Source: Phallusia mammillata (lineage: Eukaryota). From it: 64,000 nucleotides of DNA. Below are positions 606-55,490 of the stretch, one piece after another. Location of the stretch: positions 31,434,001 through 31,498,000 of the forward strand of contig OZ281496.1 in assembly GCA_965637545.1 (NCBI GenBank), given 5' to 3'. A program made the position numbers and the translations under genes. The first letter of the stretch is position 1; each line of letters starts with the position of its first letter. Under the pieces are notes generated by a model, which did no database searches, was not told where the DNA came from, and worked only from the letters and a program-made list of their open reading frames with translations.

Positions 606-3600
606 TTACAGAGGCTGATTCTTGTAGTCTGTTATGACATTTTTACTTAATCTGTGTTTTGTATTCAAAACAACCGCATTTTCAAGAGTTTGAAAAGGCA
701 GGACACTATTTTTTTTACTTTTCAACCTTAAGACCTTTGTTACCTTTTTTTCTGTGGAGGTCAGTTACGGGTTTAGTAGCCACAAAAGGGAAAATTTATG
801 TAGAGTTGGTTCTGGTTTGCGCTAAAAATTGCCACCAGCAATTATTAACGTATGTATATAGCCACTTGTAACAATTACACCCGCTCGATGCAAGCAACAT
901 TAACTGGCGGTTGGTCAAGTACCGAACCTGTTAGTGGTAATCAAATTGCGCTGTACGTTTTCATGTGACGCTGTTTTTATCATTAATTACTTAGACACTC
1001 TGCTAGTTCGTCTCTGATATTTCGCACAACAGCATAGACATCGTATGTGACACATTGTTACGTCATATCCTGTATGATTGTGACGTATGTAACGTATGTG
1101 CTGCCCATCACTTAATATTGAACCGATTTAGAAATTAAGCGCGTCTAATTCTTTCGTTAGATCATGAATTGTGGTTCTGTTAATTCAATAACATTTGAAA
1201 TTGAGTCCATGCAAGTTATTATTTTCCCGTGCAAACCAAGTTAAGTGATGTTCCTTTTGAGGTCAAATACAGGGGCGCGCAATCGTTTCGTTATTGTCGG
1301 TCGCGTTTAAGGTTTTTCCCAGCCCTGTAAAGATTTATTCTAGCCCTCAAAAATCGGTGTATGGACATGAGAACATGTTTTACAGAGTGCAACCGTCATG
1401 TCGTGTTTTAAGGCTCAATTGCAAAACGCGGGGGTGTATGTATGACAATGTTGCATTTTTTTCTTGTAACTGTGTTTAACTGACTGAAAATTAATTTTAA
1501 ATACTCCTGTGTTTTCAGTTTAAAGTGCAGTGCAAAAAATTTCAGTTGTTTGCAACTTAAATAAGGTTCCAAACTACTCAGCTTAACACACTTACAGTGA
1601 TGACATAAACAACTTACTGATGGTGCAGTTTGTCCCACTGTAACCTCTTGGGCACATGCATTTGTATTCGTTAAGCCGATTATCACAACTTCCTCCGTTC
1701 TGGCAAGGTTGCGGGGCGCACTCGTCGATATCTTCATGAAATAAGTTGTGATGTTAATTTAATGCATGACTGTGTAGAACAGTGGTTCTCAACCAGGGCC
1801 CATCACCCTCCAGGGAGGGGGGGGGGGGGGCATAGGTGTCAGCTGACTATAAACACCCAACAAAAATTAGTGAGCCATTTTCTTTGTTAAGGTCAGAATT
1901 AAGTGTGTGTTGCAAATGATTTCATTTCCTATAATTTAATCGACTATTTTGTCCATATTGAGGTTTATTTTTAGCAAAAACATTATCCGGATAGATTATG
2001 GACTTTACATATATTTTTGGAAGGGGGCACGGGTCTTACGGGGTTACTTATAGGGGGCCACGAGACCCGTACAAATGAGGAGGTTTGAAAATGGTTTGGC
2101 TTTACAAAAAGGGCAATTTCAAATATTTTATAGTTTAACATAAAGTGGATTTGCAAGGGTCATAATTCCATAAAATGTATTTTTTAAAACATGTTAGGCC
2201 TTTTATAACGTGGGTTCACTGAAGTCTTGCTTAAAATAGATCGGCCAGCAGATTTTAAAGTTTAGCCCTGAGCATCAAAAAGGTCGTTGTGTAACATTGT
2301 GCGGACATGTAGCTAATATATTTTCAGTTGATTTTGTGAGGCGGATATTAGGAGAAATTCCCCTGTGATCAAGGTATTTTACGCGGGACGTTGTCATCCT
2401 TTGAATTAATGCTCGGCCCGTTGAACCACTTGTCGGGAAGGCCTTAGGTAAGCGAAAATTAGAGGAACTTTTTTGTATGTCAGTTCAAGCTGCTTTTTAC
2501 AGGACCTTACTTCTTCTAGAAAACGGTCACAGCGCATACCTTCCTGTGTTTTGGAAACAACTTAGTGCGACCAATGTCTTTTACCAGCTGCACTGATGAT
2601 ACCTTACAGGTCTAAAGAGTGTGCACTGTCTGCAGCTTATCACTTATTGGCTTGATGCCTTTTCATTGAACGTGTAATGTTTTAGTGTGAAACAGGCTGG
2701 ATTTAGTTTCATGGTACACACCTTGGCTACAGTTCTTCCCCGTCCAGCCCGGCACACAAGCACATTCGTACGAAGTGTCGGTTCCGTTGCTACAGTTGCC
2801 CTGGTTTTGACACGGTTTGGTGAAACACTGGCCGATATCTGCATGAGAAACAACAGTTGTTAATAAAAAGCATTCACGTTAAGTAAGCTGCAGACAGTGC
2901 ACACTGTTTTAACCTATAAGGTATAGATGGCTACACTGGCCAATACGGTCGTTATCTTGTCACCAGCTGCACTAGTGAGATCCTTATCGGTCGAAATAGT
3001 GTGCACTGTCTGCGGTGTACTTGATATTTACTTAATAGAGGTAATGCAATTGCCAGAAGAGCTCTATAAACTTGATACTATACCTGGTAGCAACTGCTTA
3101 TATTCACTAAATATTTGTTTAAGTGTAAAAATTGGCAACTCGTTTGTCCAAATCTCATTGCATACAACGTTGCAACAAAACAGGTTTAACCAAACAAGTG
3201 TGTTTTACTAAACTGTTTTTAAGCGATTTTTACTAAAAATCTGTCGAAAGCGGATTCCAGCGTTTTGTTTAAAACTATAGTGCGCTGGATCACGTCTAAA
3301 AATAAAGACGTGTTTATAAAGCATAAAATACACATAAGTGGTATAATAATAAGTTTTAAATGACATAAGTTTTCGCTTACATTCTGTGCAGTTCCGTCCT
3401 CTGTAGCCGAAATGACAAGTGCAGTTGTAATCGTCCACCAAATCAGTGCAAGTTCCATTCTGACACGGGTTGATGGCACAGTCGTCGATGTCTGATGAGA
3501 ACAACATACAAAGGATTACAATAAAAATTAAACCCATTTTATACAATTATAATTTGGGACACACTCCGTTCCCAGTATTTTAATTTTGTGATATAACCTT

Positions 3601-6600
3601 CAACAACATACAGTGCTTAACAAATCAAAAATGGTTTAAACATAGCGAACTTGCTAACACTTTGGGACTCTATACACGAATTTGTACATTAGTTCAATGA
3701 CTATTTGTACATTAGTTTAATGACAAGGGCCCAAATAGACGTAAAAAGCAAAACGGGTGTAACTGATATGGCCTTCATATCACTGATGATGACACGAGCA
3801 TTTACTGAAACGTTTGAATAGTAAAGCATATCGCTTTTCACGTCTATTTTCGGCCGTTATCTCTTTAAACTTGTAACTTTAAACCGTTAAAAAAGTTAAA
3901 AAAAACACGAAAGTAATTCTCTGCACTGTAAGCCAGGGTTTAATTCGGTCAATACTTGCGTTTTGTCGATTTGGGCCGTTATTTTTACCATTAAACTTGT
4001 AATTAAGTAAGTTTAAAGCGTTTATAGAACACGGAAGCAATTCTCTGCACAGGGTTAAATTTGGTTGATACTTAAACGACGAATTTCTTGAAACTCATAA
4101 CGACTTACTCTCTTCACAATTTCCTCCTCTATAGCCTGGGTGACACGAGCAGTAGAATTGATTGATTCCTTGTGAGCAATTTCCGTATACACACGTGTGG
4201 TTCTTGCACTCGTCCGCTGCAAAGCACAGAAACCGATCGGTTAATTCGGATGAAACTTCTGTTGACCGTCGATACACCTGACATGTGCACCTTATGCTGT
4301 CTGTGACGTTATAATGGAATAACAATGCCCAGCGCGCGGTACCGCTTTGTGTGAGCTCGTTTGGGCCATTGTTACAAGAAAAATGGATATATCTGTGACG
4401 TCGTAATGAAATAACAATGCCCAGCGCGCGGGTTCCGCTTTGAACTGATCGTTTGGATCATCATTACAAGACAATACGTACACTAAGCACTTATTTTGTG
4501 GTACCTGATAACAAGCGCACTTACAAGGCATTGTTACGTAATCTTTTTTTGTGGCACAGGATCTTATGCAACTTTATGTCGGGCTACACACCTACAACGA
4601 CGTCATAACTAACTATTTGTACGTCATAAGGGATGTCAAGTGTTGCGTCATACTTGGCAGTGACGTGTTGAAGATGAATGAGGTCGGTGATGATCCACAA
4701 TCTTCGCTCACGATCCCGTTTCCACTTGATCCGTTGTAATATTCGAGTCCCGGTCGTCTAATGATACGGACTTTTCCTCCGCTCGCTAAAATCAGTTCGC
4801 TCATTGGATTAAATAGTAGGTGGGGGATTTTACAAATGACTAGGAAGCGGTAACTATAATTGTGCCAGGTCATGCTCTGCGTGCTACTGGTAATATGTAA
4901 TCCAGTACTACCTGTTTCATAGTCGGGTCGTTAGAAGTTGCTAGGAAGCGGTTACTGTTATACTTTATATTCATGCGAATGCGTGTTTTTTGTGCCATGC
5001 CACTCTTTTCAAGTTTAATTTCTCCATAGCCCGTTAATGATCTTTACTTTAATTTTATCAAAAAATGTTTGAAATATATAAGCTATCGCTGCCAGGCGTA
5101 ATATCAACTCATCCCTGATTTTTTACCGTGATGAAGGCGACCTGTATAGGACGTCGAAACGTCGCAATTAAAATACATTTGCCAGAAGAGCTCTATAAAC
5201 TTGATACTGTTTGAAAGTGTGTAAGCTTACCATTTCAACTGGATTTAATAGTTAAAAAATCTGTACAATAAAATGCAGCTGCGCCTTTATCAAAAACCGC
5301 CAGCATAATAACAAAACAATCACCGTATTCGCAGGTATTTATGATCTCACAACCTTGCTAATGATGCGACAATACTCTTTATGACGTCACACTCACCATT
5401 GATGACGCCAGCGTGGATAGCAGCAGCACAGATAGAGGATTGGGAGCTGTAGGGACTTTTACCACAGACCTTGTGAGCCTGGCACTGGGGAGGGCAAGTT
5501 AGTGACGTCACTCCGAACTGGGGATCCCCCGTCGTGTTGCAGGTCGCTGGAGAAAATGAAGTGAGTTTTAGAAATTAAGCGTTTTTATTTGATTTGATGT
5601 GTTTAGATTTTGCACATAGAGTAATTGTATACGCTGGCATTGGGATTCAGCCGGTTCGCACCGGTTCTATGGAACCATCTCACGAAATTTTATGAGATCA
5701 GCGAACCGGTTAGCATTTCTGGTTACTGTCAATGGACTTTTTGTGAAAGAACCGGCTAAAAAATATGATTTTTGTGATAAAACCGGCTGAAAAATATGAC
5801 TTTTGTGATAGAACAGGCTTAAAAATATGACTTTTGTGATAGAACCGGCTGACAAAAAGTTGATCCCACCACTGTATATACATATACAACAATCCAACTA
5901 TAGTGAAATACAAAGAAACGTTTAAAACGCCCCTAAATTATTTCATTACAGTTTAAATATAGAACACAAACGTTGATTAAGTAGCCATTGTTATCACCCT
6001 GGCTAATACTTTCAGGTCCTGTAAATCAGGCCAAAAACAATTAATCACTATTAGTGAATAGGGTAGTGATTGTGACAAAACAATGCGTCATCTGTTATAA
6101 CAATGACTACAAGACAAAGCTCGTGTATGTGAATGAATTGTTTCTAAGTTTTATGTAGGGAGTAACGGAATATTACCGCTTTGGGAAAAGGATTTTAATA
6201 TATATTTTTATATTGGATTTTTTATCATTATTCCTGATAAACATTGTTATTATGGGTACCCTTCCCTGAAGGGGACACATATTGATTTTACTCAAAATGT
6301 TTTTGTTTTTTTTCTTTTTTTTTCTTCTACCCGAAGTTTGTCCGACTCGTTTTTCCATCAAATCCTTGATGGATTTGGATGAAATTTACACAGATGGTAG
6401 ATGTAGTTATGTAGATGTGCATCCCACTTTGTTTTGTTGATAACCCCGTTATTTACCCCGTTAGCCCCCTAAAATGGGTGAGTTTTTAAACAGTGTCAGA
6501 ATTGGCTGAAATTTGGATTTCTTGTATAGTATGCCATTTATATGTGTCGATTGTTGTGTTCAACCCTGTAGTCCTAACATTTACCCCACAAGCCCCTAAA

Positions 6601-26717: not shown

Positions 26718-29700
26718 ATGATGTTTCATAGAAAACCTGTTTGGGCCTCGGTGGCAATTTGTGTTTTATTCACTGGTGAGTTGCAGTTCCTAAACAACCT
26801 TGTTTCAACTTGAAATCATCTAGAAAATTGTACAAATTTTATTCATTAAAATTATCTCTTTCCAGATTGGCAAAATTTGCAGAGCAAAATACAACAATTA
26901 CCTCACAATTACGCGGTCTACCTGGAAAATTTGTCACATTCGAACAATTTGGCACGTGTCCAATATAATCAACCTCTATTACGTAACAATTAAATCATTC
27001 GCGCAACAATTTGCATACGGGTTTCGGTGCTATTTTTACGTCATAATGATAATTCTCTGTAAGATAAAACGGCAATCTTACTACATTGTGACGTCAGAAA
27101 CGGTTGAAGAGTTCAAATTACACAATTCGTAGAATCGAACGTGGTTTTAATTTTTCACTTCAAAGTCATCTTTAAACCGATTGTGACGTCATTTACAAGC
27201 ATTGTTGTAATTTGCGAAACAAATCGGGCTCGTTTTTGTTTGTGAAAGTTTGAATTGGAGCTATAATGAATATTTTGTTTTTAGTTTTCCGACATGTTTC
27301 CGGCCAAGGCACTGACACTGTTGACGAACGAACGCAACTGGATTGTCGTAAGTAGAAGACTGAATAAGAATATTTTATAAAAAAGAATTAAGTTGTCAAG
27401 TTTATAGTAAAATAAAACAGAAAATGTGCATTTGAAACAGCGCTTTTCAAACTAGGGTCCGCGGTCCTTTAGGACAGTGGTCGGCAACCGCCGGTCCGCG
27501 GCCCGGTACCGGTCCGCGAGGAGTTCGTTACCGGGCCGTATAATTTTTCAGGTTTAATGCTATAAAACATTTTGCCCATGTATCCCGGGAATAATGAACT
27601 AATTTAAGCGTTTTTGTTGCTAAATATTTGTAGTTTCTTGAAGACCGGTCCGCGATAAAATTGTAGTTTCAAAAACGGGCCGCAGTGCAAAAAAGGTTGC
27701 CGACCCTTGCTTTAGGAGTCCGTGAGGCAATTTTGGTAACGCAAAAAATAATGAAATAGTTTGAGAGCCACTGATTTAAGACCATTTACTAAAAATAGAT
27801 TAGATTGAAAACAACATTTAAAGATTTATTTTGTATATCACATGTTTGGAAACGTTTGATTCAAGACTGAAATCAGTTAGCTTTAGTATAAAGGACAAAT
27901 ATATTTTCGCTATGCAAGCGTTTTCAGTGTCTAAAAAGGCAACACTAAAATAATATGAAAACGGGAAATCGTTAGAATAGGAAATAGTTAACTCCTCATT
28001 CAAATAGAATCCTACATAAAGTTTTTCAACATTAAAAACTTTTTTTTCAACACAACACTGTTTTCATTTATTTTTGACGAATCTTTCTGCTTGTTCGTAG
28101 ATACTGACGATGATACTGTAATAGCGAAATATATATCTCTTTAAAACCAAAGGGTTATGTTTTTTTCTGAACTTACATCCGTTAAAAAGGAAAATTTATT
28201 TATTTATTTGTTTATTTATATTCAAATAGAGTCTTACATAAAGTTTTTCAACACAGTGAAAGGAAAACTTATTTATTTGTGTGATTTCAGAACCTACGCT
28301 GAACAAACCGAGCAATTTAGCTTCGGGATTTTTCGACGGCCTCGGTGAAACCAACATATTGTTATTATGGAAGGCTCCTTTCCAATCGTGGGGTTTTACT
28401 GTTAGAGTTTACACGTGAGTTTTACTGGCCATTTTTTCACGGGGTTCGAACCCAGGACACTCCCGGGGACGAATTCCGATCAGGTTTCTATGCGTCTGTA
28501 TGTGGGTCAGGCGCACTCTGGCATTGCATTGGTTGAATATATTGCACTGCTAATATTGCTGCTTTGAGCGTTTGGATTCGAAATCTGAATACCTGTGTAA
28601 AGTTAATTTCCTTATTAATGTAATTTCCTTGCATATAATGCAAAAGACTGCGACGATTTAGGTTCATTAATTCATTACCTCAGGAAATTTTAAAGTTAAA
28701 CACTAAATTTATTGTTTTACAAAACAAATGCATTGCGCTTTTATAAGCGTCGCCATTCTCTGAAAAACAACCAAACCGTTTATTACAGAGCTTACAGAGA
28801 ACTTACGAAGCAATCATGAAAATAGCAACATAGAAAAAATGTTAATTTGGTCGATTGGAAAATATGAAAAGATATTTTACTTTGGAACACTATACAACGG
28901 TCTGCTCTTAAGTTTAATGACGAAAATAACGGCCCAAATGGACGTAAAAAGCGACATGCTTTATATTTCAAAAGTTGCCATCATCAGTGATATATAGGTC
29001 ATAACTTATCAGTTTTTATAAAATTTGTTCTCAATTTTCACAGCATGGATGGTGTTCTACGGAAGGAGATACAGAATATCAGGACGCCTTTCTACAACGT
29101 AACAGACCTGGACTCGGGAACGACGTACAACGCCACTGTGTCTGCCATTTACGTCTACGATAACTCTCCGCTGAAACTTGCCTCTTGCGAAACCGAAGCT
29201 TACACGTTCACAACCTGTAAGACCACGTGACTAAAAACAACCAATAGGAGAAAAGGAATTTTTTGTTAAACGTGTTGTTAACTTTAGGGGGCGAATTTTT
29301 AAACAGTAAAAACAAAAGCAAGCTGTCAAAAGCCCAAATGACCTCTACGGGCTCACCAGTGCAGCTGGGGACAGAGTAATGAGTAAACATACGTTCTGTG
29401 TGTGTCAAGGTTGAAAGCCAAAATTGCTGGACTAAACTGAACAATATCGCTTAAAAATGTTCCAATATATTTGGTGTTTGCGTTTGTTAAAAATATGTAA
29501 AATGTGTAAAATATTTCAGTTATTACAGAACAAAACCCTAACTAGTCCGTTACAAAATCTTTTTTGCGAAAGACACCTGGCATATAATATAACCTCTTAT
29601 GTTTTCACTGAGGTGTCAGTTACAATAATTTTACAAACTAATTTATCATAATTTCTCATTTCTAAACTTACATGAAATAATAGTTGAATAATTTAACAAT

Positions 29701-32700: not shown

Positions 32701-35700
32701 CACAGGAGCTTCCATTACCGGGCTCCTTCAGGAACCTGTTACCACGACTACAGAGGCCATGACAACCACAACACCCAAACCACTAACACAGTGAGAACCT
32801 ATCATAAATTGTTGAGTTCTATACCTAAATTGCAGGCGCTATAAAGCTTTACAGCAAAAATTGTGTGTGATCGAAATAATCTTTTTTAACTTTAGCAAAC
32901 ATGCAGCTAATTTGTGGTACTGTATTTGTGTTTGTGTTTTCTGTATTTATGGTAATTCTAACAATTTCTTTTTTCAATTTTAGTTGTCTCTCTAAACATG
33001 CTGAGGCAACCGCCTATTACGAAGCCAACCCCCAGTCAAGTAATGGTCCCGAATACCCCAACTGCGATGCTGAAGGTCTTTATGTGACGACAAAATGCAA
33101 AACAGGCACAAACGAGTGTCATTGCATCGACACAATTGACGGCATGAAAAAACTCGGCAGCGATTTTGGTGGAGAAGCTTCACAGATTCCATTGAATTGC
33201 GACAACTGTAAGTTTCAGCTATGAATAATATTGCATGTCACAAACACTATAGAAGCCCAAATTAGACATAAAATTGAATGCTTAATCCTCATATTAATCT
33301 ATCTATTTCTAAGACTTTATGAGAAATGTATACATAACATTCTGTGCAACAACAAAATTGTCATGATTTTTCTTTCTGTAGATGGAAATTACGGAAGTTC
33401 TGCCAGCAATCTTAAAGTGAATGGTCTCACTACTACCGGAGCTGAAATATCATGGACCGGCCCACCAGATGTTTTTGGTTACATTGTAGTGCTTACAAGT
33501 GATGTGGTGGTTGTGCAGAGTGTTATCGGGAAAACCTCCATTAAACTTACTTCACTGATTCCTGGCACTGGTTATATTGTGGAAGGTGAGACAAAACTGA
33601 GTGGTTGTTGTTGTTGTTGCTTTCTCAATGGGAATATTATTTAAAGGCTGCTGATGGAAGTTTGTTTTTAATTGGGATGTCGTTGGTGAATTTTAGAATG
33701 TATTCTGATTGTAGGTAGATTTTAACACACATTTTTTTTAATTACTTTGTAATGGACATTGTTAAGGTGAATAAAAAGCTAGTTTGCTATTTCAGTTTTT
33801 GCTTAAAATAATATTAGGCAGAGTTACAATCATTTCTTACAATATTATGTGTAAATTTTGTTTGCGTAAGATGTAAGTCAGTCTTTTGGTAGAAAGAGAT
33901 AAACACAACTTAAATTAAAATCTTTTATTTAATTTTTAGTTATTGCTGTGAATGGAAATGGTTGGACCAGTTTGACGATCAGCATCTTGTTTTCGACGCC
34001 CACCATTAACATTCCAGCTCGTTTGAGAGAAAAGGAAAGAACTGAAAACAGGTTCGGAAAAAAATGTTCATTTTTGTGTGTTATATATAACACAGCAATA
34101 TTAAGCACACCAGAACCAGGCACCAAAATGTAAATAGCTGCACATTGATTTGAGAGCTAAATACATTGTTCAGCTACTTATTCAAAACTAAGGTTGTGGC
34201 ATTGTGGGTAAACACGACTGGGGTAAGATTAGTGGGTTTCTTGCTCTGACGTTCCTGATTTTACCAATTTGTATAATAGACTATAGTTTACATTTTGACT
34301 GTAATGCTTTCATTATGCTATTACATTTTAATATTCACAAACATCTTTCTAAATGATTCCAATACAGTTACAGATATTGCACAATGTTTCAACATATAAG
34401 GTCTCATCAGTTCAGCTGGTGACAAGATATTGGTCACATATGATAGTGTAGCCATGTTTAAAAAAATCAGTTTTTGGATCTTTGCATCAATTTTAACCCA
34501 GTTTTATCTATTCAGTGTGACTGTGAAGTGGGACTTGGTAGACGGAGCTGAATCTTACAATGCTAAAATCAGTGACAGACTTACTGGTGTTGTGGTGCAG
34601 AGTCACGATCTTGCAACAAACATAATCCAATTTACTGGTTTGCAACTAAAGACTGCCTACGTCATTCGTGTCAAGTAAGTTTGCCACACTACCTGGCAAA
34701 TCTAGGGTTTGTTAATACAATAGTTATTAACTTTTTTAAGCTTGTAACCCTTAAGTTTTTGTAAAATTTCCTGAGCCTTATGTTAATAAAGCTCTGACAT
34801 AATACAAAAGACTTTATAACTAGTACTTTTGGAACTATTAAACCGTCCCAACTTTCATCTCTATCACCCCTGGTGTATATAGAATACATCATGCACATGT
34901 TTCAATCTCTTTTGTCATCATCCGTGCATTATGTATTCTTGATACACCAGTTCTATGGAAGTTACGTATATGGTTAAATTACTTTTCAAGTCCGTGTATA
35001 GTGTTCCTAAGCCAGTTCCTACTGTGGTAAAAACATAATTTCAGTGATTTTCAACCATTTTAATATTTGTTTTAGATCTGTGTCCACGATTAATGGAGTT
35101 GCTCACGAAAGTCCACCAGCTGAGCTAAACGTTGAAACGACCTGTAGAATGAAACTGGATGTTTTGTTTGTACTTGACACATCCAGTAAAACAGGCTGGA
35201 ACAGTTTCCAAAACGAGAAAATGTTTTTCTCTGAAATCATGCAGAAACTTCCTCCAATCGACTTTGAAACTGGAAGTCGGATTGCAGCACTGAAATACTT
35301 TAATCGAGCTTTCACTATGTTCTCTTACACAAGGTAATATCAAGTTTATAGAGCTCTTCTGGCAATTGTATTTTTATTCCGACGTTTCGACGTCCTATAC
35401 AGGTCGCCTGTTTGGAGTAAATAACACTAAATGCGCGTTGCCGTACAGTGCACGATAAACAAAGTACAATCAACATAAAACCACTGACCCTGCGGTGGAA
35501 GCAAAACTTTGGGGGCAGCTTCTAAAGTTTTTTTGATGGGGCAATAAGTACTTTGTATGAGTTGGTTTCAACAGGAAAAAACATAGACTTTTGTTTCTTT
35601 ATTACCCACCCCAACCTGGCCATGCTAATGGACTGGGCACATAGACCTAAAAAACACTCTACAGCTTGTATGTAGAAAAAACATTGAAAGGCAGACTTTA

Positions 35701-38465: not shown

Positions 38466-38555
38466 GCTACTTTGCTTTGGTATTAAAAATAAATCAAAAT
38501 TTAATTTTTGAAGATAATGCTAAACAGTTGTGATGTTTTCTTTCAATGTATAGCG

Positions 38556-41500
38556 ATGGACAATTCCATATTAGGTCGATTCTTTGGGGGTAAAGGGGCC
38601 GATATCCCCAATGTGACCCTTGACCCCTCCACTATTCCACCTCCACCTACTCCACCTGACAAGGATAAGGACAAGAAAAAAGGAAGCCCAGGCGACAAAT
38701 GGTCAAACTTCGACCCCACTGGTCTGGAACGAGCAGCTGCAGCGGCAAAAGAACTCGACAGATCAAGTAAAAATGAATTCCTTTTATTTTTGAAAAGTGC
38801 TTTTTTATTCACGAACGAAACTATTTTTCCGAGTAACGGAATCAGTCGTTCAATACCATGAAATATTTATATTTTGCCTTCTGCAAGTTTTACAATAATC
38901 TAAAACTAGAAACGGTTGTAAGCACATGGTTTAGTTTCTTTGTGAGTACAGTTTTAGAACAGATATAATGTTACATTTGTGACACAGCAGAATGTAAATC
39001 TTTGTTTTACATCTCAAAAAAATGTGTTGTCACTAATTTAACTTTGAGAGTTGGTGTGTTTGGGAATTCACCACATAGTAAATTGTCTTTGAAAAAAACC
39101 CTCCACATTGAAATCTTAAATGATTTTACATCATATGGTGATAATAATGCATTTTTCTTTGTTGTTTAGGAAATGCCAAAGAAGCGCTTGAGTTGGCACG
39201 AATGCAGGAAACCACAAAACAATTTGAATTCCAAGGCAAAGTTAAGGTTAGCTGTTAATAATATTGATTTGTTGAATTATTTCATGTTTGCTCAAAATAA
39301 AAAATAATGCTTACTAATGTTTGAGTGTGCTGTAAGAGTGTTCAAGTAACAATGCAGTTACATATAACAACATCCTATGATCTAGCAGTGAAAAGTCTAA
39401 AACCATGCACTATTTAACTTAGGCAGCGCTGGCCATGTAAATAAGTGTTTGGTTCCACATGCTTTTCAGACTCAGCTTTGTGACAATTACAAAACCAATG
39501 CAGTGATTCATTAGTGGATGTTTTTTTATTTTTGCTTAATGGCAGTCCCAGATATGAAAATCATTGAGAAGATTAACATGTTTGTGTGTTTAAGTAAAAA
39601 GGTCATCACTTAAAGTCAACTGTTTGGTCCAGTGGTCTTTAGGTATGTATATATATATATATATAGTTCTGAAAATTGACAATTTGTTTTAGGAATATGA
39701 AATTAACTTGGAGCACATGAAAGTGGAACAAGTGAAACAACAAGGAGAAGAGAGAAGAAAAACGCTTCAACAAGATGCAAAGATTAAACAAGAAGTGACT
39801 ACCTATAATAGGAATGCGTTTAATTGCACAACTAATTTGCCAAACTTTTGATGCAGTTAACTAGATTAGGCAATCACCCACATTTTTCTGTATTGCCAAA
39901 GACACAATTTTGAACAACACTAATTAAGTGCTAACTACCAACTGTACATTGTGAAAAATATTTTTGTTATTTTGCAGCAAGCTGAATACCAAGATATCCT
40001 TGCCCGTCGTCGCTATGACGATCAACTTAAACAGCAATCAGCGATGAATGAAGATAATTTAAAGCGCCAGGAAGAATCAGTTCAAAAGCAAGAAGCAATG
40101 AGACGAGGTAAAACAACATGGTGGTTTTGCAGCTTGTTAGTGTGTTGCATATTCAATGTGTTACATGGAATCTTCTTTATAACCTTTACTTCATGATGTA
40201 CAAAACACTTTTGGGTCCCTTGTTCTAAAGAATAGGTCTTAGTGTATGGATAATGTCTACATGTGCACAATAACCCTTATATCTTTTGTTCTGTTCACTA
40301 CGATATTTAACTTTAAAAAGAAAACAGATTCCTAACCTTATTTAAAAAGAGGTGTTTTTAAAGTTTTGCTTAATCGTTGTCAGCAACACTGGAGCATGAG
40401 ATGAAACTGCGGCGTGATAATGAAATGGCGAGGGCTGAGGCTGAAGCGAATGCACGAGCGAAAGCCGACCGACAAAATCGTGATTTACGACGAGAGGAAA
40501 TTAAACTTGAAGGAGCGGAAAGAAGACAAACTGTCCTCGAATCAATAAAGTAGGTGTGCTTTACTTAGCCGATTTTTAGTTGAAACTGCAAAATCTAAAG
40601 CATATATAGAGGACATGCAATTGGAAAGGAGTTGCACTGGAACTGAACTGCTGTGAAAGTTGTATAAATAGTTTGTTGAAACGACTGAATTATGAAACTT
40701 GTTTATTTTTGTTACAGAACAGCTGGAAGTGTTTTGGGTGAAGGAGCTCGAGCATTTTTAACTGATTGGGACAAAATTACCGCAGCAGTAAGTTTGACAA
40801 TAAAATTCTTATATTTGAGAATTTAAACAAACAAAAAGTATGTCATTTGTGGTTGTTGAGGATGTAGCCAGCTACACTGCATTGCAGCACAGCGCATATG
40901 GCCAATGTCTTGTCACCAGCTGCACCGATGAGGTCCTATAGCTCTAAACCAGTGGTTCCCAACCAGTGCCCATTGCCCCCCAGGGGGGCCACGAGCTGTG
41001 TTCCGGGGGGCCACGGACGTATATTCACAAGAAACACCCACTAAAAGTCATTTTCACTAACTTTATTCCCGAATTTAATCGACTATTTCACATACTATTT
41101 GTTTATAGTGAGGTTTATCACGCTCATTTACTATATTAGACCTGTTTAAGGCCAAAATTAATACCGCATTCCAAACCGAGATTACTATCTACATTTTAAG
41201 GGGGCCACAGGTCCTACATGGTAACTTGAAGGGGGCCACGAGCCCAAAAAGTTACTTTAAGGGGGCCATGGTCCACGAAAGGTTGGGAACCACTGCTCTA
41301 AACAGTGTTTACTGTCTGCAGCCTACTTTTCTTTTATCGGCTATTGGCTTTTATTGGATCCTGTGTTTTTGTTTTGTTTTTGTATTGTAAAAATAAATAA
41401 AAAAGTTTTAAACAACCCTTGTATTTTGATTTTCGGTTTATGTTAGGCCAACAAACAAACAAACAAATTATTTCTTGATTCAGGCATTTGGTGTAACGCT

Positions 41501-46625: not shown

Positions 46626-49600
46626 TCATGACGATGGCTCTTCATCTGAAACTTTTTGACGCTTTTTGGCACGGATTTGGTTTAAAGTTTCTTCGATGGA
46701 TCTCTGGTCGCGCTTGTTTGTGCTCGGAACTGAAACAACAGAAAGCACAATTAGAAATTTGTTACAGTTGAATCAGCAATGTCCAAGATATTTTTAGCTT
46801 CTGTGGAACATAATATTACATCTTTACAGCCAATCACCTTCTTTCTAAGATAAGTATTGGTTAGATTAATTCCAAAGTTATCTAATCCAGCCACTACTTC
46901 TTAGTTAATCAATAAATCCTAATCCGACAACAAGATATATAAGGCAAGTTTTTTGCTACCTTTTAATGAAAGCATGTGAAAAATTTGCCCAGCGTCAATA
47001 AACATATTGACTGCACAAACATAATCTAGAATTAATGACATTAACTGCACATGATTGGCTTGACTGTATGTGTTCAGTTGTGGGACTCTTGCAGCAAAGA
47101 CAATTTGTGTGACAAGCACTTACCCATTCCAAAAGTTTTGTTTGCTTCTGTTCGTCGTGCTGCGTCTTTAGCTGCCGAGGTTCCAATCAGGTGGTTGTAT
47201 TTGTCCTTGTAGTTTGACATTGGCTCACTGACGTCGTTGGACTTTGTATGTTTGCTTTCCTCAACCTCAACAATCTAAAATACAACATAAGGTTGTGGTG
47301 GGATTGAAACCTTTTTTGTCAGCCGGTTCTATCACAAAAGTCATATTTTCCGCCGGTTCTGTTACAAAAAGTCCATTGACAGTCACCAGTAATGCTAACC
47401 GGTTCGCTGATCTCATAAAATTTCGTGAGACAGTTCTACAGAACCGGCTGAATCCCACCACTGAACATAAAGTTGTCCTGGTGTACCTAGTTGTGGTACA
47501 GACAGTGCCAACTGTTTCAGCCTATAAGGTCTCATCAGTGCAGCTGGTGACAAGACATAGGAAGTGCTATAAGTATACCTGTATAGCATGTCTTACCACA
47601 AGCCACATTGATAAGACCTTACATGTCAACACAAGTAGCAATAATAAGTCCTTACAACAACATGCACTGTGCAGTTACTTTATCATTGTAAGGGCATATT
47701 TTGTATCTACCATGTTTTGCTGTGGCAACTGTTTTGGCCTCTTAAGGTTTTATCAGTGCAAATGGTGACAAACCACAGAAATTTCTAAAGCCTGGTATAC
47801 CTGTCTAGCATGTCTTGTCACAATGCCAACTGTTTCGGCCTATAAGGTCTCGTCAGTGCAGGTGATGACAAGACAAGTGCTAGAGGCTGGTCACCTGCAT
47901 AGTATATATTATTACCAGCTGCACTAATAAGACCTTACAGTGGCATGCACTGTTTGATACTTATCCTGGTATTGGCATATTTTGTATTCAGTGTGTTGTG
48001 CAGATTGTCTTATACTTTTTGTTGTTTGACTTTTTCCTGCGTTTCTTTATTCCATTCCTCCCCGTGTTTGTAAGCATTTATTTCATCTTCAGTTGGTGGG
48101 TCTTCTTTTTTAAACAACATCACATATCTGAAACATAAACAACAACCTCCATTTGATCTTTACCAGGTTTCTACCAGCAGGTACTTCAACTCAAGCCTGA
48201 TCGTTTAAGTTGTCACAGTTATTTATGAAAAAAGATTCATAATACAGTTATACTACTAGTTATATGACAATTTAAGTTATATTATTACCTTTTTAGTTTA
48301 CAAACAACTTTTGTATGTTTACAAACAGCAGGTACTTTGAGCCAAGTCTGATTGTTTAATTTTGTTTTAAAACAAGACTTATAATACAGTACAGCTGGTT
48401 ATCTGACAATTTAAGTTTACCCATTTTTACAAACAACTTTGGTATTTTTTGTTTGCAGTAGGTTATGTTTTGTTTAAGTGGTCACAGTTGTATATTAAAC
48501 AAGGTTTATAATGCAGTATACATAAGTTATATTTCCCTATTTAGTTTTCTAAACAACTTTAGATTTGGTATTGTTCGCAAAAAAAATCAATTCCATAACA
48601 ACTTGCCACACAAATGATCTTTTTGTTTTTACCTGTCATTATCTTCTACTCCGAACGCTTGTGAAGTGATGCCTGCTATTTCAGCTATCTCGTGTCTGAA
48701 TGACAAACAGTGGCATTAAATTTTCACACATGAAGTTGAATACCATGAACATATTTTATGTGATCAACAACAATTGCTTTTTATTCTTTAAAAGCAAGGG
48801 GGCAACCTTCTGCCCATGGGCCATATGCAACTTATATTTTTTTTGATCAGCTTGTGGAAAATCTGTGTCATATCCTTTCATGTACCAGGGAGTTTCAAAT
48901 TAAACACTGCATGTTACAGTTGCCTTTAAGTTATGTTTAAGCATCATTCCTGCCTGCCTCCATAATATTACTGCTACTTTGCCCCATATATGCAAAAGGT
49001 TGCCACATTTGTTTTAAAGTATCTCATAACAAACTACTTTCCATTTTTAACTGCAGTTACGGTTTAGGTTGCATACTTGCATTATCTGCAACTAATAACC
49101 TCAAATATGCTTAATTTTCAGTAGGCCTATTATCCTAACAATTTGTGGCAGTAAATGATAGAAAATTTTACAAACAAAACCGAACACAATTTTTTACCAC
49201 ACATTCTCACACAATGGTCCTCTGCAGTTTGTTCATCGCTTTCAATCGATGTCGTGTCTTGGATGAATCGCGAGCAAAATCTGAAATTGTCTTTTCAACT
49301 TCAACGCGGAATTTCTCTTTTTGCTCCCGTTCCACTTTTTGAAGTTTCTTTAATTTCTCTTGATGAGCTGAAACAAATTAGGAAGCTTTGCATAAAGTTT
49401 TATGGCATAGTCCACAAACCTAATAAAGTGTGTATCAAACTTATTTGGTTGCAAGCTGTTTTTTACTCCACCAATAATGCGGCATATTTTTATTGCAATG
49501 CTAATATTATTTAGACCACCTTGCTCTTTGATGCAATGTACATTTAATGTTCTTTTTCACATATATACTATTTAAAATATCTTGAGCACCTTAATATGCA

Positions 49601-50482: not shown

Positions 50483-53400
50483 TTACTTAATTAAACTTAT
50501 ATTAGTTGCAGGACTTTTGCATTGTCCCAGCACAGATGTCAATTCAGTTTCATTTCCTAAACTTGGAAAAGATTTAAACGAGCTGGTTTTGAAGAATCCC
50601 TTAAAGTTTCTCATCCACGAATCCAAAATGTTTTGTTTGTCCGTGACTTTCTGCTCCACATTTTTCAAAGTCATCCCCTCAAATTCTTTTTCGAGTTTTT
50701 GGTGTTTTAACTTGAGATGTTTCAAAGTTTGTTCCTCTTCAGTGGTCGAGTGCTCGGCTAATTTCTTTTCCAAGGAAACTATTTCTGTTCGAATTCTGAC
50801 TCGCTCTCTGAAAAACATTTTGGTAATATGTCGGCTGTTTGCAACAATAAAGTTATTGTCAAGTTTATAGAGCTTTTCTGGCAAGTATTTTTATTCCGAC
50901 GTTTCGACGTCCTATACAGGTCGTCTTCATCAGTTTTTTTACCCTGAATAAAAATACATTTGCCAGAAGAGCTCTGTAAACTTGATACTATGCCTGGCAG
51001 CAATAGCTTATATATCCATTGTCAGTTTGCATTTCGGGGCAATTGAGTAAAAGTCATTTAAACCCTGATCCAAAAACTTTATGAGACTTTTTACAGGAGT
51101 GGTTCTTGACTTTTGTACCCCATTAAGATAAAATTACTCTTTAAACCTTCTACAAATACTTAAATTAGCAACTATGACAGCATAGAAAGATTATGATGTC
51201 ATTGAACTAAATCACTCTTTGAAAAATGTCAACTATCCTGTTTTGGGGTGATCACTCCATGTTGAGAACCCTGTTGAACAGAAAAATTAAATTGGCCTTA
51301 CCTGATGTTAACTGTGAGTTTTCTCAGACTGTGGGCCTTCTCAAGTGGATTTTCAGTTTTGGAAAGTTCGGGGCATTTGCATTTGATCCTTGTTATTGTT
51401 GCATCTGGAAGTTTTTCCTCCAGAAGAAAAGCTCTTCTCTCATGGCTCGGATGCGTTGAAATATATTCCATTTCGCCGACAGTTTCTCCGGCAAATTGAT
51501 CACAAGCTTCCTAAAAACAATTGTCAACTCAGTACAATCATGGTTATAATACTTTTGTACAAAGAGGAAGTTCTTAGACTTTCAAAACATTTCCAATGAC
51601 ATAAAAAAGCCCAGAGAAGTGCAATATAAAAGAATATACTTTACATCCAAAAACAATTTGACATTTTGTAAAACTATGTTCAAACATTTTATCAAACTAT
51701 CAATCAGCTATACAAGAGTTTATTGGTTCAAATCTCTGAGTTTTATACTTAAATTTGTTTGTTTGTTCAATTTCTTGGATGTGCACTTGGATAAAGCAAG
51801 GATCTTAAAGGCCAATTTATTGCAAGTTGCAAGTTTGGAAACATTTGCATCAATGCTTAAATCAGTTAGCTATCTTATATAGAACAAATATAGTTCGCTT
51901 ATGCAAGCATCTTTAGTGTCTAAATAGCAACACAAAAAGGATTTAAAATTTTTGCGAGCTTTCATGGAAAATGTTTTCATGGAAAATTACCTTCAAAGCC
52001 ATTTTGTCCCACAGTAGAACGCTCCACCTCGGATCGTAACAAGCTTTTGCTGCGAGCGTCAAACCGACTTCGTCAGCCTCAACTTCAAGTTTTCTGCTAA
52101 ACGGCAAATTGAACCCAACCTCAAATATAAGAGGATAAATTAATTGTTGAATCGAATACACGATGAAAGCTGCAAAGTCCTCGAACAAAAACCAGATGAA
52201 TGATAAAACGGGAACCATAAGGATTTCCCCGAAAGCCAGGAAGCTTTGTTGCTCCTGTAAAAAATGGGAAGTTATAAATTTTCTCCTTACATGCATCAAA
52301 GTGATTGTTATGTTAACTTTATGTATAGAGTAACTTTGGGTTGTGGACAAATCATAAAGTGGGGTAATTACGCAACCAAGTAGGGCCCTACAAATTTGTT
52401 TAAAGAGGGTAAGTGAAAAATAAGGACAACTGATGTAAACATAGTTTAAAGCAGACAACTGGAATTACTGATTGAAGCAAACAAGTTGATTTAAACTGTA
52501 AGCAGCCTCCTTTGACAAGTGAACCTGTGGATACAGACATGCAAAGTCAGACCAATAACAATATGGTTTGGTTCAAAGGGCATAAATGCTCACATGCAAT
52601 CCAAGTGGTACCATGTAGTGTTTTGTACCATCCATTTTAGTAAGTAAGTAAGTCTATTTCGCACAAAATATTTCAAGTTAAAAAACTAAAAAAAAAAGAA
52701 GAATGTGCGGAAGACTCTGTGGTCACCGTGTCACCTACCCCTTTTTAAATAAACTTTAGACCAAGAAAGGATGCCTGGCAAGGCTGTGGCTTTAAACATA
52801 ACTTACCTGCACATGGCCAAGCAGAGCGTGGGACATCTCATGGCCGATGATTACAGCCAATTCCTCCCAACTGTCCAGCAACTTTAAAATTCCAGTGAAC
52901 ACGAATATCTCACCACTTGGCAAAACAAAAGCATTGTTCACTGAGTCGTCATTGACAACATTCAAGTTCCATTTGATGTTTTTCACCAAGTCCATGTCAG
53001 AGTTCCGGCTCACCAAGGTGTTTACGATGGTTTGACATTTTTGAAACAATTCTGAATCTCTGTTGACAATTTTGCTCTCGTATTCATTTACCAGTTGTTG
53101 GTAATTCATCTCGGAAAGGGCAAGAATTTGATCCTTGGTAAATGAAATCCACCTTTTTCTGCCGGTCAGTGGACAAGTGTCGAAATGCATGTATGAATAA
53201 TAACCGATGTACACCAAAGTAAAAGAAAGAAAACTCAACGAAATCCTATGCCTTGTCAGCTGTTCTTGCATTTCTTTTGGTAACTTGTCATGCCATTTTC
53301 GAAACGACCGACCAAACACAATAGAAACACCTTTAAGCACTTTAATGCCTTTCGTTTTCAGTAGCAATGCAAATATTGGGTTAATTGAGCTTCTGGGACT

Positions 53401-53562
53401 CGTACGAAACAAAACGACGTTTGGTCGATGATTTCTGACATAGTTTGGTCTCAAAAAAAGTCTCGATGTGTTTGTAAACCGGTTTCCAAATTGATTTCCA
53501 TCATAAAGAAGATTACTGGAATTCTTTGCTTTGGAAAAGAGAGCGAAACAAAGTCTAGACAT
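50483..53562 (-). CDS. OMA1: Mitochondrial metalloendopeptidase OMA1 (peptidase M48)
   Basis: 53562-52807: presequence-like N-terminus, CPLTGRKRWISF, NAFVLPSGEIFVFTG, IGHEMSHALLGH (HExxH). 52254-51991: LPFSRKLEVEADEVGLTLAAKACYDPR. 51510-51302: EYISTHPSHERR. A frame-compatible last exon lies at 50807-50483. Confidence 0.93.
50857..51017 (-). ncRNA. Family A foldback repeat with an intact minimal hammerhead core (50933-50898)
   Basis: Minus strand: CTGATGA-A-GACG-A-CCT-GTAT-AGG-A-CGTC-GAAAC-GTC, enclosed by arms of about 42 bp (50857-50896 and 50946-50988). Confidence 0.75.
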
Positions 53563-54722
53563 TCTTTTGCAATAACAATACAGACACAAATATAAACGGA
53601 CTGTAAGCTGCTGAAAAGTCTGATAAGATTGTTTTTATTTACAAGGAAATAACAATAGAAGAGCAAATCCAACGTCCACATACAGGGTATTCCCCGTTTC
53701 TGCAGTCAGGTACAGTGACATAAAAATGGTAAAATAGCATTTTACAATTTATAAGTCTTTTAATGCATTTAAAAAATGTAAATTACGTAGTACTTCTTGT
53801 GAAAATTTCACATTACATTGACTGGTTTTATTTGCACTGTAAAATGGCTTAAGAAGACTCATAATTTGAATTTATTGTTTTACAAGACAATACTGAAATA
53901 AAGTTTTTACCAGCGTAGGAATTTTTATGTTTAATTTACATAAATCTGTGATGTTCCGTTGGGTTGTTTTGTTGTTACAATGGAGTTGTTAAAGTAGGAT
54001 TTTTAGATTCGCAAATATTTTTAGTACTTTGACTTATCCTAAGAACGTCCCACGTGATTTGTTTGTTGACAACCGCGCGAGTTTCAAGTTTCTAAAGTTC
54101 GCAAAAATAAACACTGTTTTGTCTTAAATCTTTGGTATAATCACATTCACATTTCATAACAGGTTGAAATACCTAAAGGATACAATTTGCAAACTTTGTC
54201 AGTTTTTTTTTATTTACGCTACGTAAAAAATAAACAGTAGAAAAATTGTGTATGAAACATTGAACTTATCACGGTAAAATACTGCACTACTGACTACAAT
54301 GAGTCTTTAGAAGCAACGAGTGGCAAGTACGTTTTATATTGAATATGTTGACGTAATGTTGCAGCTGTGATTTTGAAGTATTTCTTAGCAGTTAACATAG
54401 TTTAGTTTGAAATTAAAACACAAAAAATGAAAAATCAGACATTCGTGCGATAACGCTTGCATTTTATGCAGTTAATGAATAATTTAAAACATCATGTACA
54501 CATAATTTTGCCTACTATTCTAGTTTAGTGCAAGTCACAGTTATTATGCTGAAATACAGAAATAAAGTGGAAATAATTTACACATGTGGCCAGCAGACTA
54601 ATTGACAGTTTTTGTTGTGCTTTTCGGTGAGCAAAACATGACTGTTTGGCAAGAAAAAAAGCCCCTAGCTCAGTTTAACTACTAAATTGTCAAGATAGGC
54701 AAGATTTGCGAATGTAAACAAA

Positions 54723-54900
54723 CATTGGTGGGATTCAGCTGGTTCCCACCAGTTCTATAGAAACGTCTCACAAAATTTTATGAGATCAGCGGAACGGTTA
54801 GCATTGCTGGTTACTTTCAATAGACTTTTTGTAACAGGACCGACTGAAAAATATGACTTTTGTGATTGAAACAGCTGGCAAAAAAATTGAATCCCACCAT
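54723..54900. mobile_element. hAT-like MITE of the CAGTGGTGGGATTC family, diverged
   Basis: CATTGGTGGGATTCAGC..GAATCCCACCA with a family-matching interior. Confidence 0.75.
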
Positions 54901-55409
54901 ATTTATACTGACATTAGAGAATAGTCCAGTGCAAAATAAATTCAACTCTCAGTGACAACTGCTGGCCACTGTATAAACTACAAAGGCACAATGCATGATA
55001 TACTTCTGGTATCCACTGCAGTTTTGCCTTATCTCTGTGTCACTGGATGGGCTTGCATAACATCTCGTGGGCCTCCAACACAAACTGCAAGCCTCTATGA
55101 TGTAAGTTTTGTTGTAAATATGTTTTACTTTATTGCTTTTTTTATTGTATTGAGAGAAAATAAGTTAGACAAGTTATTACTCACACCTTTATTCGCTGGC
55201 CTTATTCACTTTATTACCATCTAAGTTGAATGTGTGTACTGTTTTCACATGTGGCATAACTTTCATTCCCAAGCAATTGCTTGGCCATTGTAAGCTAGTT
55301 ATCTCCGTGGTTTATGACCAGTTGTGGCATCGCACACGATAGAGACGTATGGGTTTCAGCCTCTTACTCCCAACAAATTGAAATGGGGTGGCTGCACTAG
55401 CCAATACGG

Positions 55410-55490
55410 CCAATGCCTTGTCACCAGCGGCACTGATGAGATTTTTGGGTCAAAACAGTGTGGACTGTCTGCGACTTATCATTTATTGGC
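55410..55490 (+). ncRNA. Family B hammerhead repeat copy, degraded
   Basis: CCTTGTCACCAGCGGCA-CTGATGA-GATTTTTGGGTC-AAA-ACAGTGTGGACTGT-C-TGCGAC. Confidence 0.6.

What the first reader, a model, noticed from the sequence alone, without database searches (positions are those of the whole stretch)
2572..55490. A dispersed repeat family that folds into a complete type I hammerhead ribozyme (family B, about 11 copies)
Seen: the consensus across copies (2572+, 2878-, 2950+, 34367-, 40905+ split, five at 47497-47962, 55410+) is AGCTGCA CTGATGA GACC TTATA GGTC GAA ACAGT GTGC ACTGT C TGCAGCT. It gives stem I (7 bp), the CUGAUGA box, stem II (4 bp), GAAA, stem III (5 bp with a tetraloop) and a GUC cleavage triplet. 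Variation is structure-aware: the stem III loop is GTGC or TGGC, and there is a G-C to T-A compensatory pair at about 34380. Knowledge: type I hammerheads occur in Penelope-like elements and retrozymes, where animal examples are often minimal with a vestigial stem III. Inference: a high-copy, hammerhead-bearing non-autonomous retroelement with a monomer-competent fold, possibly undescribed in this lineage.
Basis: partly seen in the sequence, partly recalled or inferred. Interest (0 to 1): 0.85.

Follow-up and report, generated by a model that had tools for sequence, protein, structure and literature searches.

The report
Decayed hammerhead retrozyme repeat copies
The window holds about a dozen old, broken fragments of a small non-coding jumping element whose intact copies elsewhere in the genome carry a complete self-cutting hammerhead ribozyme; it is real, but it belongs to a kind already described in other animals (retrozymes linked to Penelope-like elements).

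Summary
The 5' half of the motif occurs 450 times unchanged in this 240 Mb genome and the 3' half 472 times, with 0 in reversed controls. About 1,370 copies lie within 3 mismatches.

The element is a 282-nt, ORF-less unit that also occurs as head-to-tail tandems. Insertions are 5'-truncated and have 8-15 bp target duplications. Half carry a head-to-head inverted partner, and some have a ~36-nt 3' "tail". These are the hallmarks of Penelope-like-element (PLE) integration. RT+GIY-YIG PLE genes are abundant in the genome.

This matches the metazoan non-LTR retrozymes of Cervera & de la Peña (2020).

In the window itself all 11-12 fragments are decayed (72-95% identity) and none passes a type I hammerhead descriptor. 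Their changes break pairs (29) far more often than they compensate (2). The claim of "structure-aware variation" is therefore not supported.

Rfam scores stay below gathering. Catalysis and circular RNA are inferred, not shown.

Earlier follow-ups of this scan reached the same reading for this family on other pieces of the same genome (s1-382234, s1-408610, s1-353671).

Verdict: a new member of a known kind, of low to moderate interest.

The parts
2566..2669 (+). Family B copy c1. It is 5'-truncated (unit positions 217-282, then 1-40) and includes the 3' tail. Hammerhead part at 2586-2637; G12 is T and two pairs are broken.
2884..2922 (-). Copy c2: a short inverted partner, truncated inside helix II so it has no CUGAUGA box. 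It lies head-to-head with c3.
2926..3013 (+). Copy c3 (unit 199-285). The core box reads CTAGTGA, so the ribozyme is dead.
29340..29376 (-). Copy c4: a 38-nt fragment (unit 227-264). The box reads CTGGTGA and the 3' half is lost.
34366..34455 (-). Copy c5 (unit 200-289). All 13 core nucleotides are kept. It has 4 broken pairs and 1 compensated pair (G-C to T-A in helix III).
40881..40954 (+). Copy c6, 5' half (unit 200-273). The box reads CCGATGA.
40950..41294 (.). Unrelated insertion of about 345 bp that splits c6. It has 15-nt terminal inverted repeats and a CTCTAAAC target duplication (MITE-like, hAT-type by the 8-bp duplication).
41297..41365 (+). Copy c6, 3' half (unit 263-329), with helix III, the GTC site and the tail.
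47499..47561 (-). Copy c7 (unit 222-284), the best-preserved window copy. The core is intact and GTC is kept, but helix II has 1 wobble and 1 mismatch, and helix I pairs at 5 of 7 positions.
47600..47700 (+). Heavily decayed probable copy, head-to-head with c7. Weak: alignment score 105 against a shuffle maximum of 91.
47728..47769 (-). Copy c8 (unit 232-272). The box reads CTGATAA and GAAA reads AAAA, so it is dead.
47820..47873 (-). Copy c9 (unit 228-281). The box CTGACGA is allowed at position 7, but position 17 is G and the helix I 3' strand is missing. It gives the only Rfam hit in the window (Hammerhead_3, 25.9 bits, below gathering).
47914..47976 (+). Copy c10 (unit 235-303), head-to-head with c9. 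The box reads CTAATAA and there are deletions in the GAAA / helix III region.
55259..55504 (+). Copy c11, the longest window copy (unit 64-318, 76% identity), with the tail. G12 is A and helix II is damaged.

Best explanation
Family B is a non-autonomous, non-coding retroelement of the metazoan non-LTR retrozyme type. Its unit is 282 nt and carries one canonical type I hammerhead ribozyme.

Proposed life cycle:
1. Tandem genomic copies are transcribed as oligomers.
2. [quoted passage not shown]
3. A host RNA ligase circularises the monomers.
4. Circular or uncut oligomeric RNA is copied into new sites by the reverse transcriptase / GIY-YIG endonuclease of resident Penelope-like elements acting in trans.
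5. This leaves 5'-truncated, partly tandem and head-to-head inverted insertions flanked by 8-15 bp target duplications.

The 11-12 copies in this window are old insertions that have decayed neutrally. None is a working ribozyme at its site.

Shown here: the family, its copy number, the intact motif in young copies, the insertion anatomy, the presence of PLE genes, and the decay of the window copies.

Inferred from the published class: self-cleavage, circularisation, and mobilisation by PLE enzymes.
For: Family and motif:
- Exact 5'-half motif 450 times, 3'-half 472 times, 1,371 within 3 mismatches, all with 0 reversed-control hits.
- 29 of 52 copies on contig C1 have both halves perfect.
- A generic CTGATGAG..CGAAAC search gives 879 hits against 3 in the control, nearly all family B.
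- The 52-nt motif has all 13 conserved core positions, helices I/II/III of 7/5/5 bp and a GUC site. Its minimum-energy fold is the hammerhead junction.
- My descriptor, with thresholds of 6/4/4 bp, finds 0 matches in 54 Mb of shuffled sequence.

Element:
- 282-nt period in tandems, GC 49.6%, no ORF above 55 aa, no A-tail.
- Homology never extends beyond the unit in 30 loci.

Insertion anatomy in 24 independent loci:
- Variable 5' truncation, and target duplications of 8-15 bp.
- 12 of 24 have an inverted 5'-truncated partner.
- 3' ends lie either 3-14 nt or 35-37 nt past the cleavage site.
- Among the first 100 genomic sites, 19 close pairs are all (-,+) head-to-head and none is (+,-).

These are the PLE hallmarks listed in PMC8557442.

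Other support:
- PLE RT+GIY-YIG ORFs are abundant: at least 128 matches, with open frames up to 845 aa.
- The class is described in PMC7229834 and bioRxiv 10.64898/2026.07.22.740005.
- Contigs of four public runs of the same organism hold the unit. One run has a 282-nt 'goes back' joint.
Against: - No Rfam hammerhead model reaches its gathering score, even on perfect copies. Hammerhead_3 gives 21-28 bits against 48.5. RAGATH-1-hammerhead gives 21 bits against 56.3, with the right type I topology.
- There is no covariation support. Variation within the family looks neutral.
- In a 140-nt context the predicted minimum-energy fold replaces helices I and III with an alternative hairpin. The 52-nt fold is only modestly better than shuffles (z = -1.7).
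- No resident PLE examined shares its 3' end with the unit. The second PLE clade could not be fetched.
- RNA evidence is from contigs of runs whose RNA status is a guess. A tandem DNA copy or a passenger in a host transcript would look the same.
Confidence: 0.8

Rival explanations
1. The copies are 5'-truncated tails (pseudo-LTR fragments) of an autonomous Penelope-like element, not a separate non-autonomous family.
For: PLEs carry hammerheads in their pseudo-LTRs and are heavily 5'-truncated. PLE ORFs are abundant here. One PLE clade (about 39% identity to the query) could not be inspected.
Against: In 30 loci taken at random by the motif, homology never extends beyond the 282-nt unit, and longer copies simply restart the unit. 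None of 37 PLE-bearing loci has unit homology at its 3' end, apart from one independent insertion that is missing from the paralogous copy. No PLE hit on C1 or C2 lies within 3 kb of an exact family B motif. The PLE copies inspected carry a different, minimal hammerhead-like motif.
Confidence: 0.07
2. The hammerhead-like motif is not catalytic in vivo. On this view it is a fossil or a structured RT-recognition signal, and the family spreads without self-cleavage or RNA circles.
For: Rfam scores are below gathering. There is no covariation. A competing alternative fold is predicted. 3' junctions lie downstream of the cleavage site, so the template was not a cleaved linear monomer. PLE clades without hammerheads proliferate well (PMC8557442).
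Against: Every conserved core nucleotide, the GUC site and three regular helices are present in hundreds of identical young copies. Equivalent motifs in coral and mussel retrozymes cleave in vitro and give abundant circRNA (PMC7229834).
Confidence: 0.1
3. The family is a SINE-like element mobilised by a LINE, with the inverted pairs arising by twin priming.
For: LINEs are present in the window (note s1-388509, not checked by me). Target duplications of 8-15 bp and 5' truncation also fit LINE-mediated insertion.
Against: There is no A-rich or microsatellite tail and no tRNA/5S/7SL head. Both arms of the inverted pairs end with the element's own 3' end. Twin priming would instead give an inverted upstream segment. 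The tandem more-than-unit-length copies and the 35-37 nt tail are PLE features.
Confidence: 0.03

Closest known systems
Metazoan non-LTR retrozymes (Cervera & de la Peña, NAR 2020, PMC7229834), for example in the coral Acropora millepora, mussel, jellyfish and Nematostella
   Same: Short unit (282 nt, within the 170-400 nt range). One canonical type I hammerhead per unit. Tandem copies. No LTR, PBS, PPT or ORF. GC below 50%. Target duplications longer than 4 bp. Co-occurrence with PLEs.
   Different: Species-specific sequence. Here most genomic copies are dispersed, 5'-truncated single or inverted-pair insertions rather than long tandem arrays. Self-cleavage and circRNA are not shown. No published report for tunicates was found in the searchable library.
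Hammerheads in the pseudo-LTRs of Penelope-like elements (Cervera & de la Peña 2014; Craig et al. 2021, PMC8557442)
   Same: Type I topology. Position near the 3' end of the inserted unit. Identical insertion anatomy: 5' truncation, partial tandems, an inverted 5'-truncated partner, and a 30-40 nt tail.
   Different: PLE hammerheads are usually minimal, with a vestigial helix III that acts in dimers. Family B has a stable 5-bp helix III with a tetraloop. Family B has no RT/EN ORF and no detectable homology to the PLE 3' ends examined.
Schistosoma Sm-alpha, newt satellite 2 and cave-cricket pDo500 hammerhead repeats (from general knowledge; cited within PMC7229834)
   Same: Type I hammerheads embedded in short, abundant, non-coding repeats of animal genomes that are transcribed and self-processed.
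   Different: Unrelated sequences. The amphibian examples need dimeric hammerheads, whereas family B is predicted to fold as a monomer.
Plant LTR retrozymes (PMC4918200)
   Same: Non-autonomous retroelements whose hammerheads excise a unit that circularises.
   Different: Plant elements have type III hammerheads inside LTRs, PBS/PPT, 4-bp target duplications and Gypsy dependence. None of these features is present here.

Membership tests
Type I hammerhead ribozyme (Rfam clan CL00010) | Conserved core: CUGANGA, GAA, the A15.1-U16.1 pair, and H17 not G | tested here: met
   All positions are present in the young genomic copies. Among the window copies only c5 and c7 keep all 13.
Type I hammerhead ribozyme (Rfam clan CL00010) | Three helices around the core, with helix I open (type I topology) | tested here: met
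   The minimum-energy fold of L028:1501-1552 gives helices of 7/5/5 bp. 39 descriptor hits in L001-L030, 0 strict hits in 54 Mb of shuffles. No window copy passes the descriptor.
Type I hammerhead ribozyme (Rfam clan CL00010) | Score at or above the Rfam gathering threshold | tested here: not met
   There is no gathering hit in the window. Perfect copies score 21-28 bits for Hammerhead_3 (threshold 48.5) and 21 bits for RAGATH-1-hammerhead (threshold 56.3).
Type I hammerhead ribozyme (Rfam clan CL00010) | Covariation that preserves the helices | tested here: inconclusive
   Window copies show 2 compensated against 29 broken pair cells. Genomic helix II variants are mostly one-sided. Post-insertion decay of a young repeat family is not expected to covary.
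Type I hammerhead ribozyme (Rfam clan CL00010) | Mg2+-dependent self-cleavage 3' of H17 | not testable with these tools
   Needs in vitro transcription. Only contigs, not raw reads, were available for RNA ends.
Metazoan non-LTR retrozyme | Short (about 150-450 bp) unit found in head-to-tail tandems, one type I hammerhead per unit | tested here: met
   282-nt period in L027-L029 and at C2:11754348/11754630, C2:15120607/15120887 and C3:1385531/1385813/1386095.
Metazoan non-LTR retrozyme | No LTR, PBS, PPT or coding capacity; GC below 50% | tested here: met
   The longest ORF in a trimer is 55 aa and GC is 49.6%. Homology is limited to the unit. PBS/PPT were not searched for explicitly.
Metazoan non-LTR retrozyme | Target-site duplications longer than 4 bp | tested here: met
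   Duplications of 8-15 bp, read from the flanks of at least 13 insertions, for example L008 (15), L017 (13), L025 (12) and L002 (12).
Metazoan non-LTR retrozyme | [quoted passage not shown] | tested here: inconclusive
   Contigs of 20 runs from 6 studies hold the unit. One run has a 282 'goes back' joint. RNA status is only guessed, and tandem DNA or host-transcript passengers would look the same.
Metazoan non-LTR retrozyme | Co-occurrence with autonomous Penelope-like elements | tested here: met
   At least 128 matches to an RT+GIY-YIG ORF, with frames up to 845 aa. Pfam finds RVT_1 and GIY-YIG.
PLE-type (trans-mobilised) insertion | 5' truncation, partial tandems, an adjacent inverted 5'-truncated copy, and a 30-40 nt tail at one end | tested here: met
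   12 of 24 insertions have inverted partners. 19 of 19 close pairs are head-to-head. 5 copies carry a 35-37 nt tail. Criteria are from PMC8557442.
PLE-type (trans-mobilised) insertion | Sequence homology between the unit and the pseudo-LTR or 3' end of a resident PLE | tested here: not met
   No homology in 37 PLE-bearing loci of the clade examined. The second clade could not be fetched.

The most novel reading that the evidence does not exclude
Family B may be a currently active retrozyme in a tunicate, the sister group of vertebrates. That would be the first in that lineage. It would make abundant 282-nt circular RNAs through a monomer-competent hammerhead. Its fixed 3' junctions lie 3-14 nt or about 36 nt downstream of the cleavage site. 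This would show that the PLE reverse transcriptase primes on uncleaved or circular template at defined sites. A tractable model animal would then allow the retrozyme-PLE mobilisation mechanism to be tested.
Probability: 0.35. Interest if true: 0.4.

Novelty: new member of a known kind. Interest (0 to 1): 0.25.

Why it matters
It extends the catalogue of hammerhead retrozymes to one more animal genome. Other agents of this scan identify that genome as an ascidian.

It also gives a clean, young family, with hundreds of identical copies, in which to study the link between retrozymes and Penelope-like elements. The relevant features are the inverted partners, the tail and the defined 3' junctions just past the cleavage site.

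For annotating this window it matters mainly as a negative. The intronic copies here are dead repeats, not functional ribozymes, and they should be masked as a transposable-element family.

Tried and rejected
- Rfam at gathering and at permissive thresholds, on the window and on perfect copies, gave only sub-threshold hammerhead hits.
- The type III reading suggested by Rfam's alignment uses the upstream GTC. I rejected it because its helix I would be a palindrome with no loop, and helix III has mismatches. The type I reading has three regular helices.
- Covariation within the family gave none, as expected for neutral decay.
- The search for an autonomous partner used GIY-YIG and PLE ORF searches. 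These found many PLEs, but none with a family B tail. One apparent association (L038/L045) is an independent insertion that is absent from the paralogue L039.
- For RNA evidence, only Logan contigs of runs with guessed RNA status were available. They show no ends and no strand, and the 282 back-joint in one run cannot distinguish a circle from a tandem.
- Literature searches for hammerheads or retrozymes in tunicates found only a count of 9 Rfam type I loci in Didemnum vexillum.
- I did not verify the organism. The name Phallusia mammillata comes from other agents' notes.


Full report
**1. Observation in the window**

Reading the listed coordinates shows a shared block: a conserved upstream stretch ending in GTCACC, then the hammerhead-like motif, then TTATCATTTATTGG.

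BLAST of the 282-nt genomic unit against the window finds 11 fragments:
- 2566-2669+
- 2884-2922-
- 2926-3013+
- 29340-29376-
- 34366-34455-
- 40881-40954+ joined with 41297-41365+
- 47499-47561-
- 47728-47769-
- 47820-47873-
- 47914-47976+
- 55259-55504+

Identity to the unit is 72-95%. A twelfth, very decayed fragment at about 47600-47700+ is weakly supported. Copy 40881-41365 is split by a ~345-bp insertion with 15-nt terminal inverted repeats and a CTCTAAAC duplication.

**2. The family in the genome**

The window is G000:C3:31434001-31498000 of a 240 Mb assembly.

| Search | Hits | Reversed control |
|---|---|---|
| 3' half, exact | 472 | 0 |
| 32-nt core, up to 3 mismatches | 1,371 | 0 |
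| Intact helix III with any loop | 1,038 | 0 |
| Generic CTGATGAG-N(8-22)-CGAAAC | 879 | 3 |

- Nearly all listed hits of the generic search are family B.
- On contig C1, 29 of 52 copies with a perfect 5' half also have a perfect 3' half. This implies roughly 200-250 complete, unmutated motifs genome-wide.

**3. The motif**

L028:1501-1552 has the following parts, in order:
- Helix I 5' strand (7 nt).
- The CUGAUGA box.
- A helix II hairpin.
- GAA.
- A helix III hairpin of 5 bp with a tetraloop, closed by the A15.1-U16.1 pair.
- C17.
- Helix I 3' strand.

Its minimum-energy fold is exactly this three-way junction: -17.3 kcal/mol, z = -1.7, 9% of the ensemble.

A simple type I descriptor that I wrote requires an exact core, H17 not G, and minimum helix lengths. 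Its results were:
- The young copies pass. There are 39 hits in L001-L030, mostly 7/5/6 bp by the script's count, which allows a 2-nt loop in helix III.
- The loose thresholds (4/3/1) give 0.4 hits per Mb in shuffled sequence.
- The strict thresholds (6/4/4) give 0 hits in 54 Mb of shuffles.

Against this:
- No Rfam hammerhead model reaches gathering, even on perfect copies. The RAGATH-1-hammerhead alignment does reproduce the type I topology, at 21 bits.
- In a 140-nt context the predicted minimum-energy fold replaces helices I and III with an alternative hairpin. Thermodynamics alone therefore does not guarantee the active fold.

**4. The window copies are dead, and their variation is not structure-aware**

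None passes the descriptor, even when relaxed.

Over the 8 copies that span the motif:
- 82 pair cells are unchanged.
- 9 changed on one side but still pair.
- 2 are compensated.
- 29 are broken.
- Change rates are 0.14 (core), 0.20 (paired) and 0.21 (loops).

Copies 34366-34455 and 47499-47561 keep all 13 core nucleotides but have 4 and 3 broken pairs.

The compensated G-C to T-A pair near 34380 is real but isolated. The TGGC loop is shared only by the three related copies of the local cluster and is absent from 100 sampled genomic copies. Genomic helix II variants are also mostly one-sided. This is what neutral decay of inserted copies predicts. It neither supports nor refutes the structure.

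**5. Anatomy of the element**

In 30 loci taken by the motif alone, homology to other copies never extends beyond one 282-nt unit. Longer copies restart the unit with a 282-nt period. The unit has GC 49.6%, no ORF above 55 aa and no A-run above 3.

In 24 independent insertions (flanks read):
- 5' ends are variable (truncation).
- Target-site duplications of 8-15 bp are visible in at least 13.
- 12 have a 5'-truncated partner in inverted orientation joined head-to-head.
- The 3' end lies either 3-14 nt after the predicted cleavage site, inside the helix I 3' strand, or 35-37 nt after it (ending in TTTTACA). A few copies end earlier.

Among the first 100 genomic sites, 19 close pairs are all (-,+), that is head-to-head, and none is (+,-). 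Four same-strand pairs are spaced 269-282 nt.

Craig et al. list exactly these features as hallmarks of Penelope-like elements: 5' truncation, partial tandems, an adjacent inverted 5'-truncated copy, and a 30-40 bp tail at one end (PMC8557442).

The window shows the same pattern in decayed form: 2884-2922- with 2926-3013+, and 47820-47873- with 47914-47976+.

**6. Autonomous partner**

The genome holds many PLE genes:
- A 314-aa RT C-terminus + GIY-YIG ORF has at least 128 matches, with 966 first-look candidates.
- The matches fall into at least two divergent groups, with open frames up to 845 aa, often in tandem or inverted pairs.

None of the 37 PLE-bearing loci I could read has family B homology at its 3' end. 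The one apparent association (L038/L045/L074) is an ordinary family B insertion that is absent from the paralogue L039. The PLE copies inspected carry a different, minimal hammerhead-like motif downstream of the ORF.

The second PLE group could not be fetched. A resident enzyme source therefore exists, but the specific partner is not identified.

**7. RNA**

Twenty runs of one organism, from six studies, hold the unit. All are kept as contigs, and their RNA status is a guess.

Laid on the unit, the contigs cover it in four runs. One 4.4-kb contig contains a whole copy, most likely as a passenger in a host transcript. One run has a 'goes back 282' joint in three contigs. That joint fits a circle or a tandem equally well. 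No ends or strand can be read. Expression as monomeric or circular RNA is therefore not shown.

**8. Comparison with what is known**

Cervera and de la Peña (PMC7229834) described exactly this kind of element:
- Type I hammerheads in 150-450 bp tandem repeats of animal genomes.
- No LTR, PBS or PPT.
- GC below 50%.
- Target duplications longer than 4 bp.
- Expression as 170-400 nt linear and circular RNAs.
- Efficient monomeric self-cleavage in invertebrates.
- PLEs proposed as the mobilising partner.

A 2026 preprint argues from vertebrate genomes that these retrozymes derive from PLE pseudo-LTRs.

Family B meets every sequence-level criterion I could test. It fails only the Rfam threshold and the test of homology to a resident PLE tail. 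I found no paper describing retrozymes in tunicates. One genome paper merely counts 9 Rfam type I loci in Didemnum.

Other agents of this scan call this genome the ascidian Phallusia mammillata. They have already reported this family from other windows with the same conclusion. I did not verify the species.

**9. Verdict**

The interpretation as a hammerhead-bearing non-autonomous retroelement is right.

The claims of structure-aware variation and of complete ribozymes in this window do not hold. The element is a new member of a well-described class rather than something new. Self-cleavage, circularisation and PLE dependence remain inferences from the class.

Noticed in passing
window 40950-41294: A MITE-like element of about 345 bp with 15-nt terminal inverted repeats (beginning CAGTGGTTCCCAACC) and an 8-9 bp target duplication (CTCTAAAC) is inserted into a family B copy. 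Internally it repeats a GGGGGCCACGAGC-like 13-mer five times. A 10-nt stretch of its terminal repeat (TGGTTCCCAA) also occurs inside the family B unit; this may be chance.
   Followed up: partly
It is a foldback whose minus strand carries a minimal, PLE-type hammerhead-like core (CTGATGA ... GAAACGTC). The flanking arm (TTGCCAGAAGAGCTCT...) recurs next to the family B copy at 3013. Rfam calls it only a sub-threshold MIR394-like hairpin.
   Followed up: no
window 56217-56306: A near-perfect 90-nt palindromic hairpin scores equally on both strands to the mir-722 and mir-9436 models, far below gathering. It is probably a small foldback repeat rather than a microRNA gene.
   Followed up: no
L039:7530-7815 (minus strand), also L038 and L031: PLE copies (RT C-terminus + GIY-YIG ORF) have a minimal hammerhead-like motif about 170 nt downstream of the stop codon (CTGAAGA ... 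GAAACGTC). It has one extra base before helix II, so it fails a canonical descriptor. The paralogues L038 and L039 are 99% identical over 286 nt past the ORF.
   Followed up: partly
L023 and L024 (G000:C1:15385053 and 15397831); L024, L027 and L028: Two family B insertions 12.8 kb apart have identical flanks, which points to a recent segmental duplication. Runs of N lie right next to family B tandem or inverted arrays in L024, L027 and L028. This fits the assembly problems that such PLE-type structures are known to cause.
   Followed up: no
L028:1461-1600: In a longer context the predicted minimum-energy fold pairs GCACUG (the end of helix I plus the start of the core) with CAGUGU (the helix III 5' strand). 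This gives an inactive conformer that keeps only helix II. It may act as a switch between the cleaving and stable forms.
   Followed up: partly
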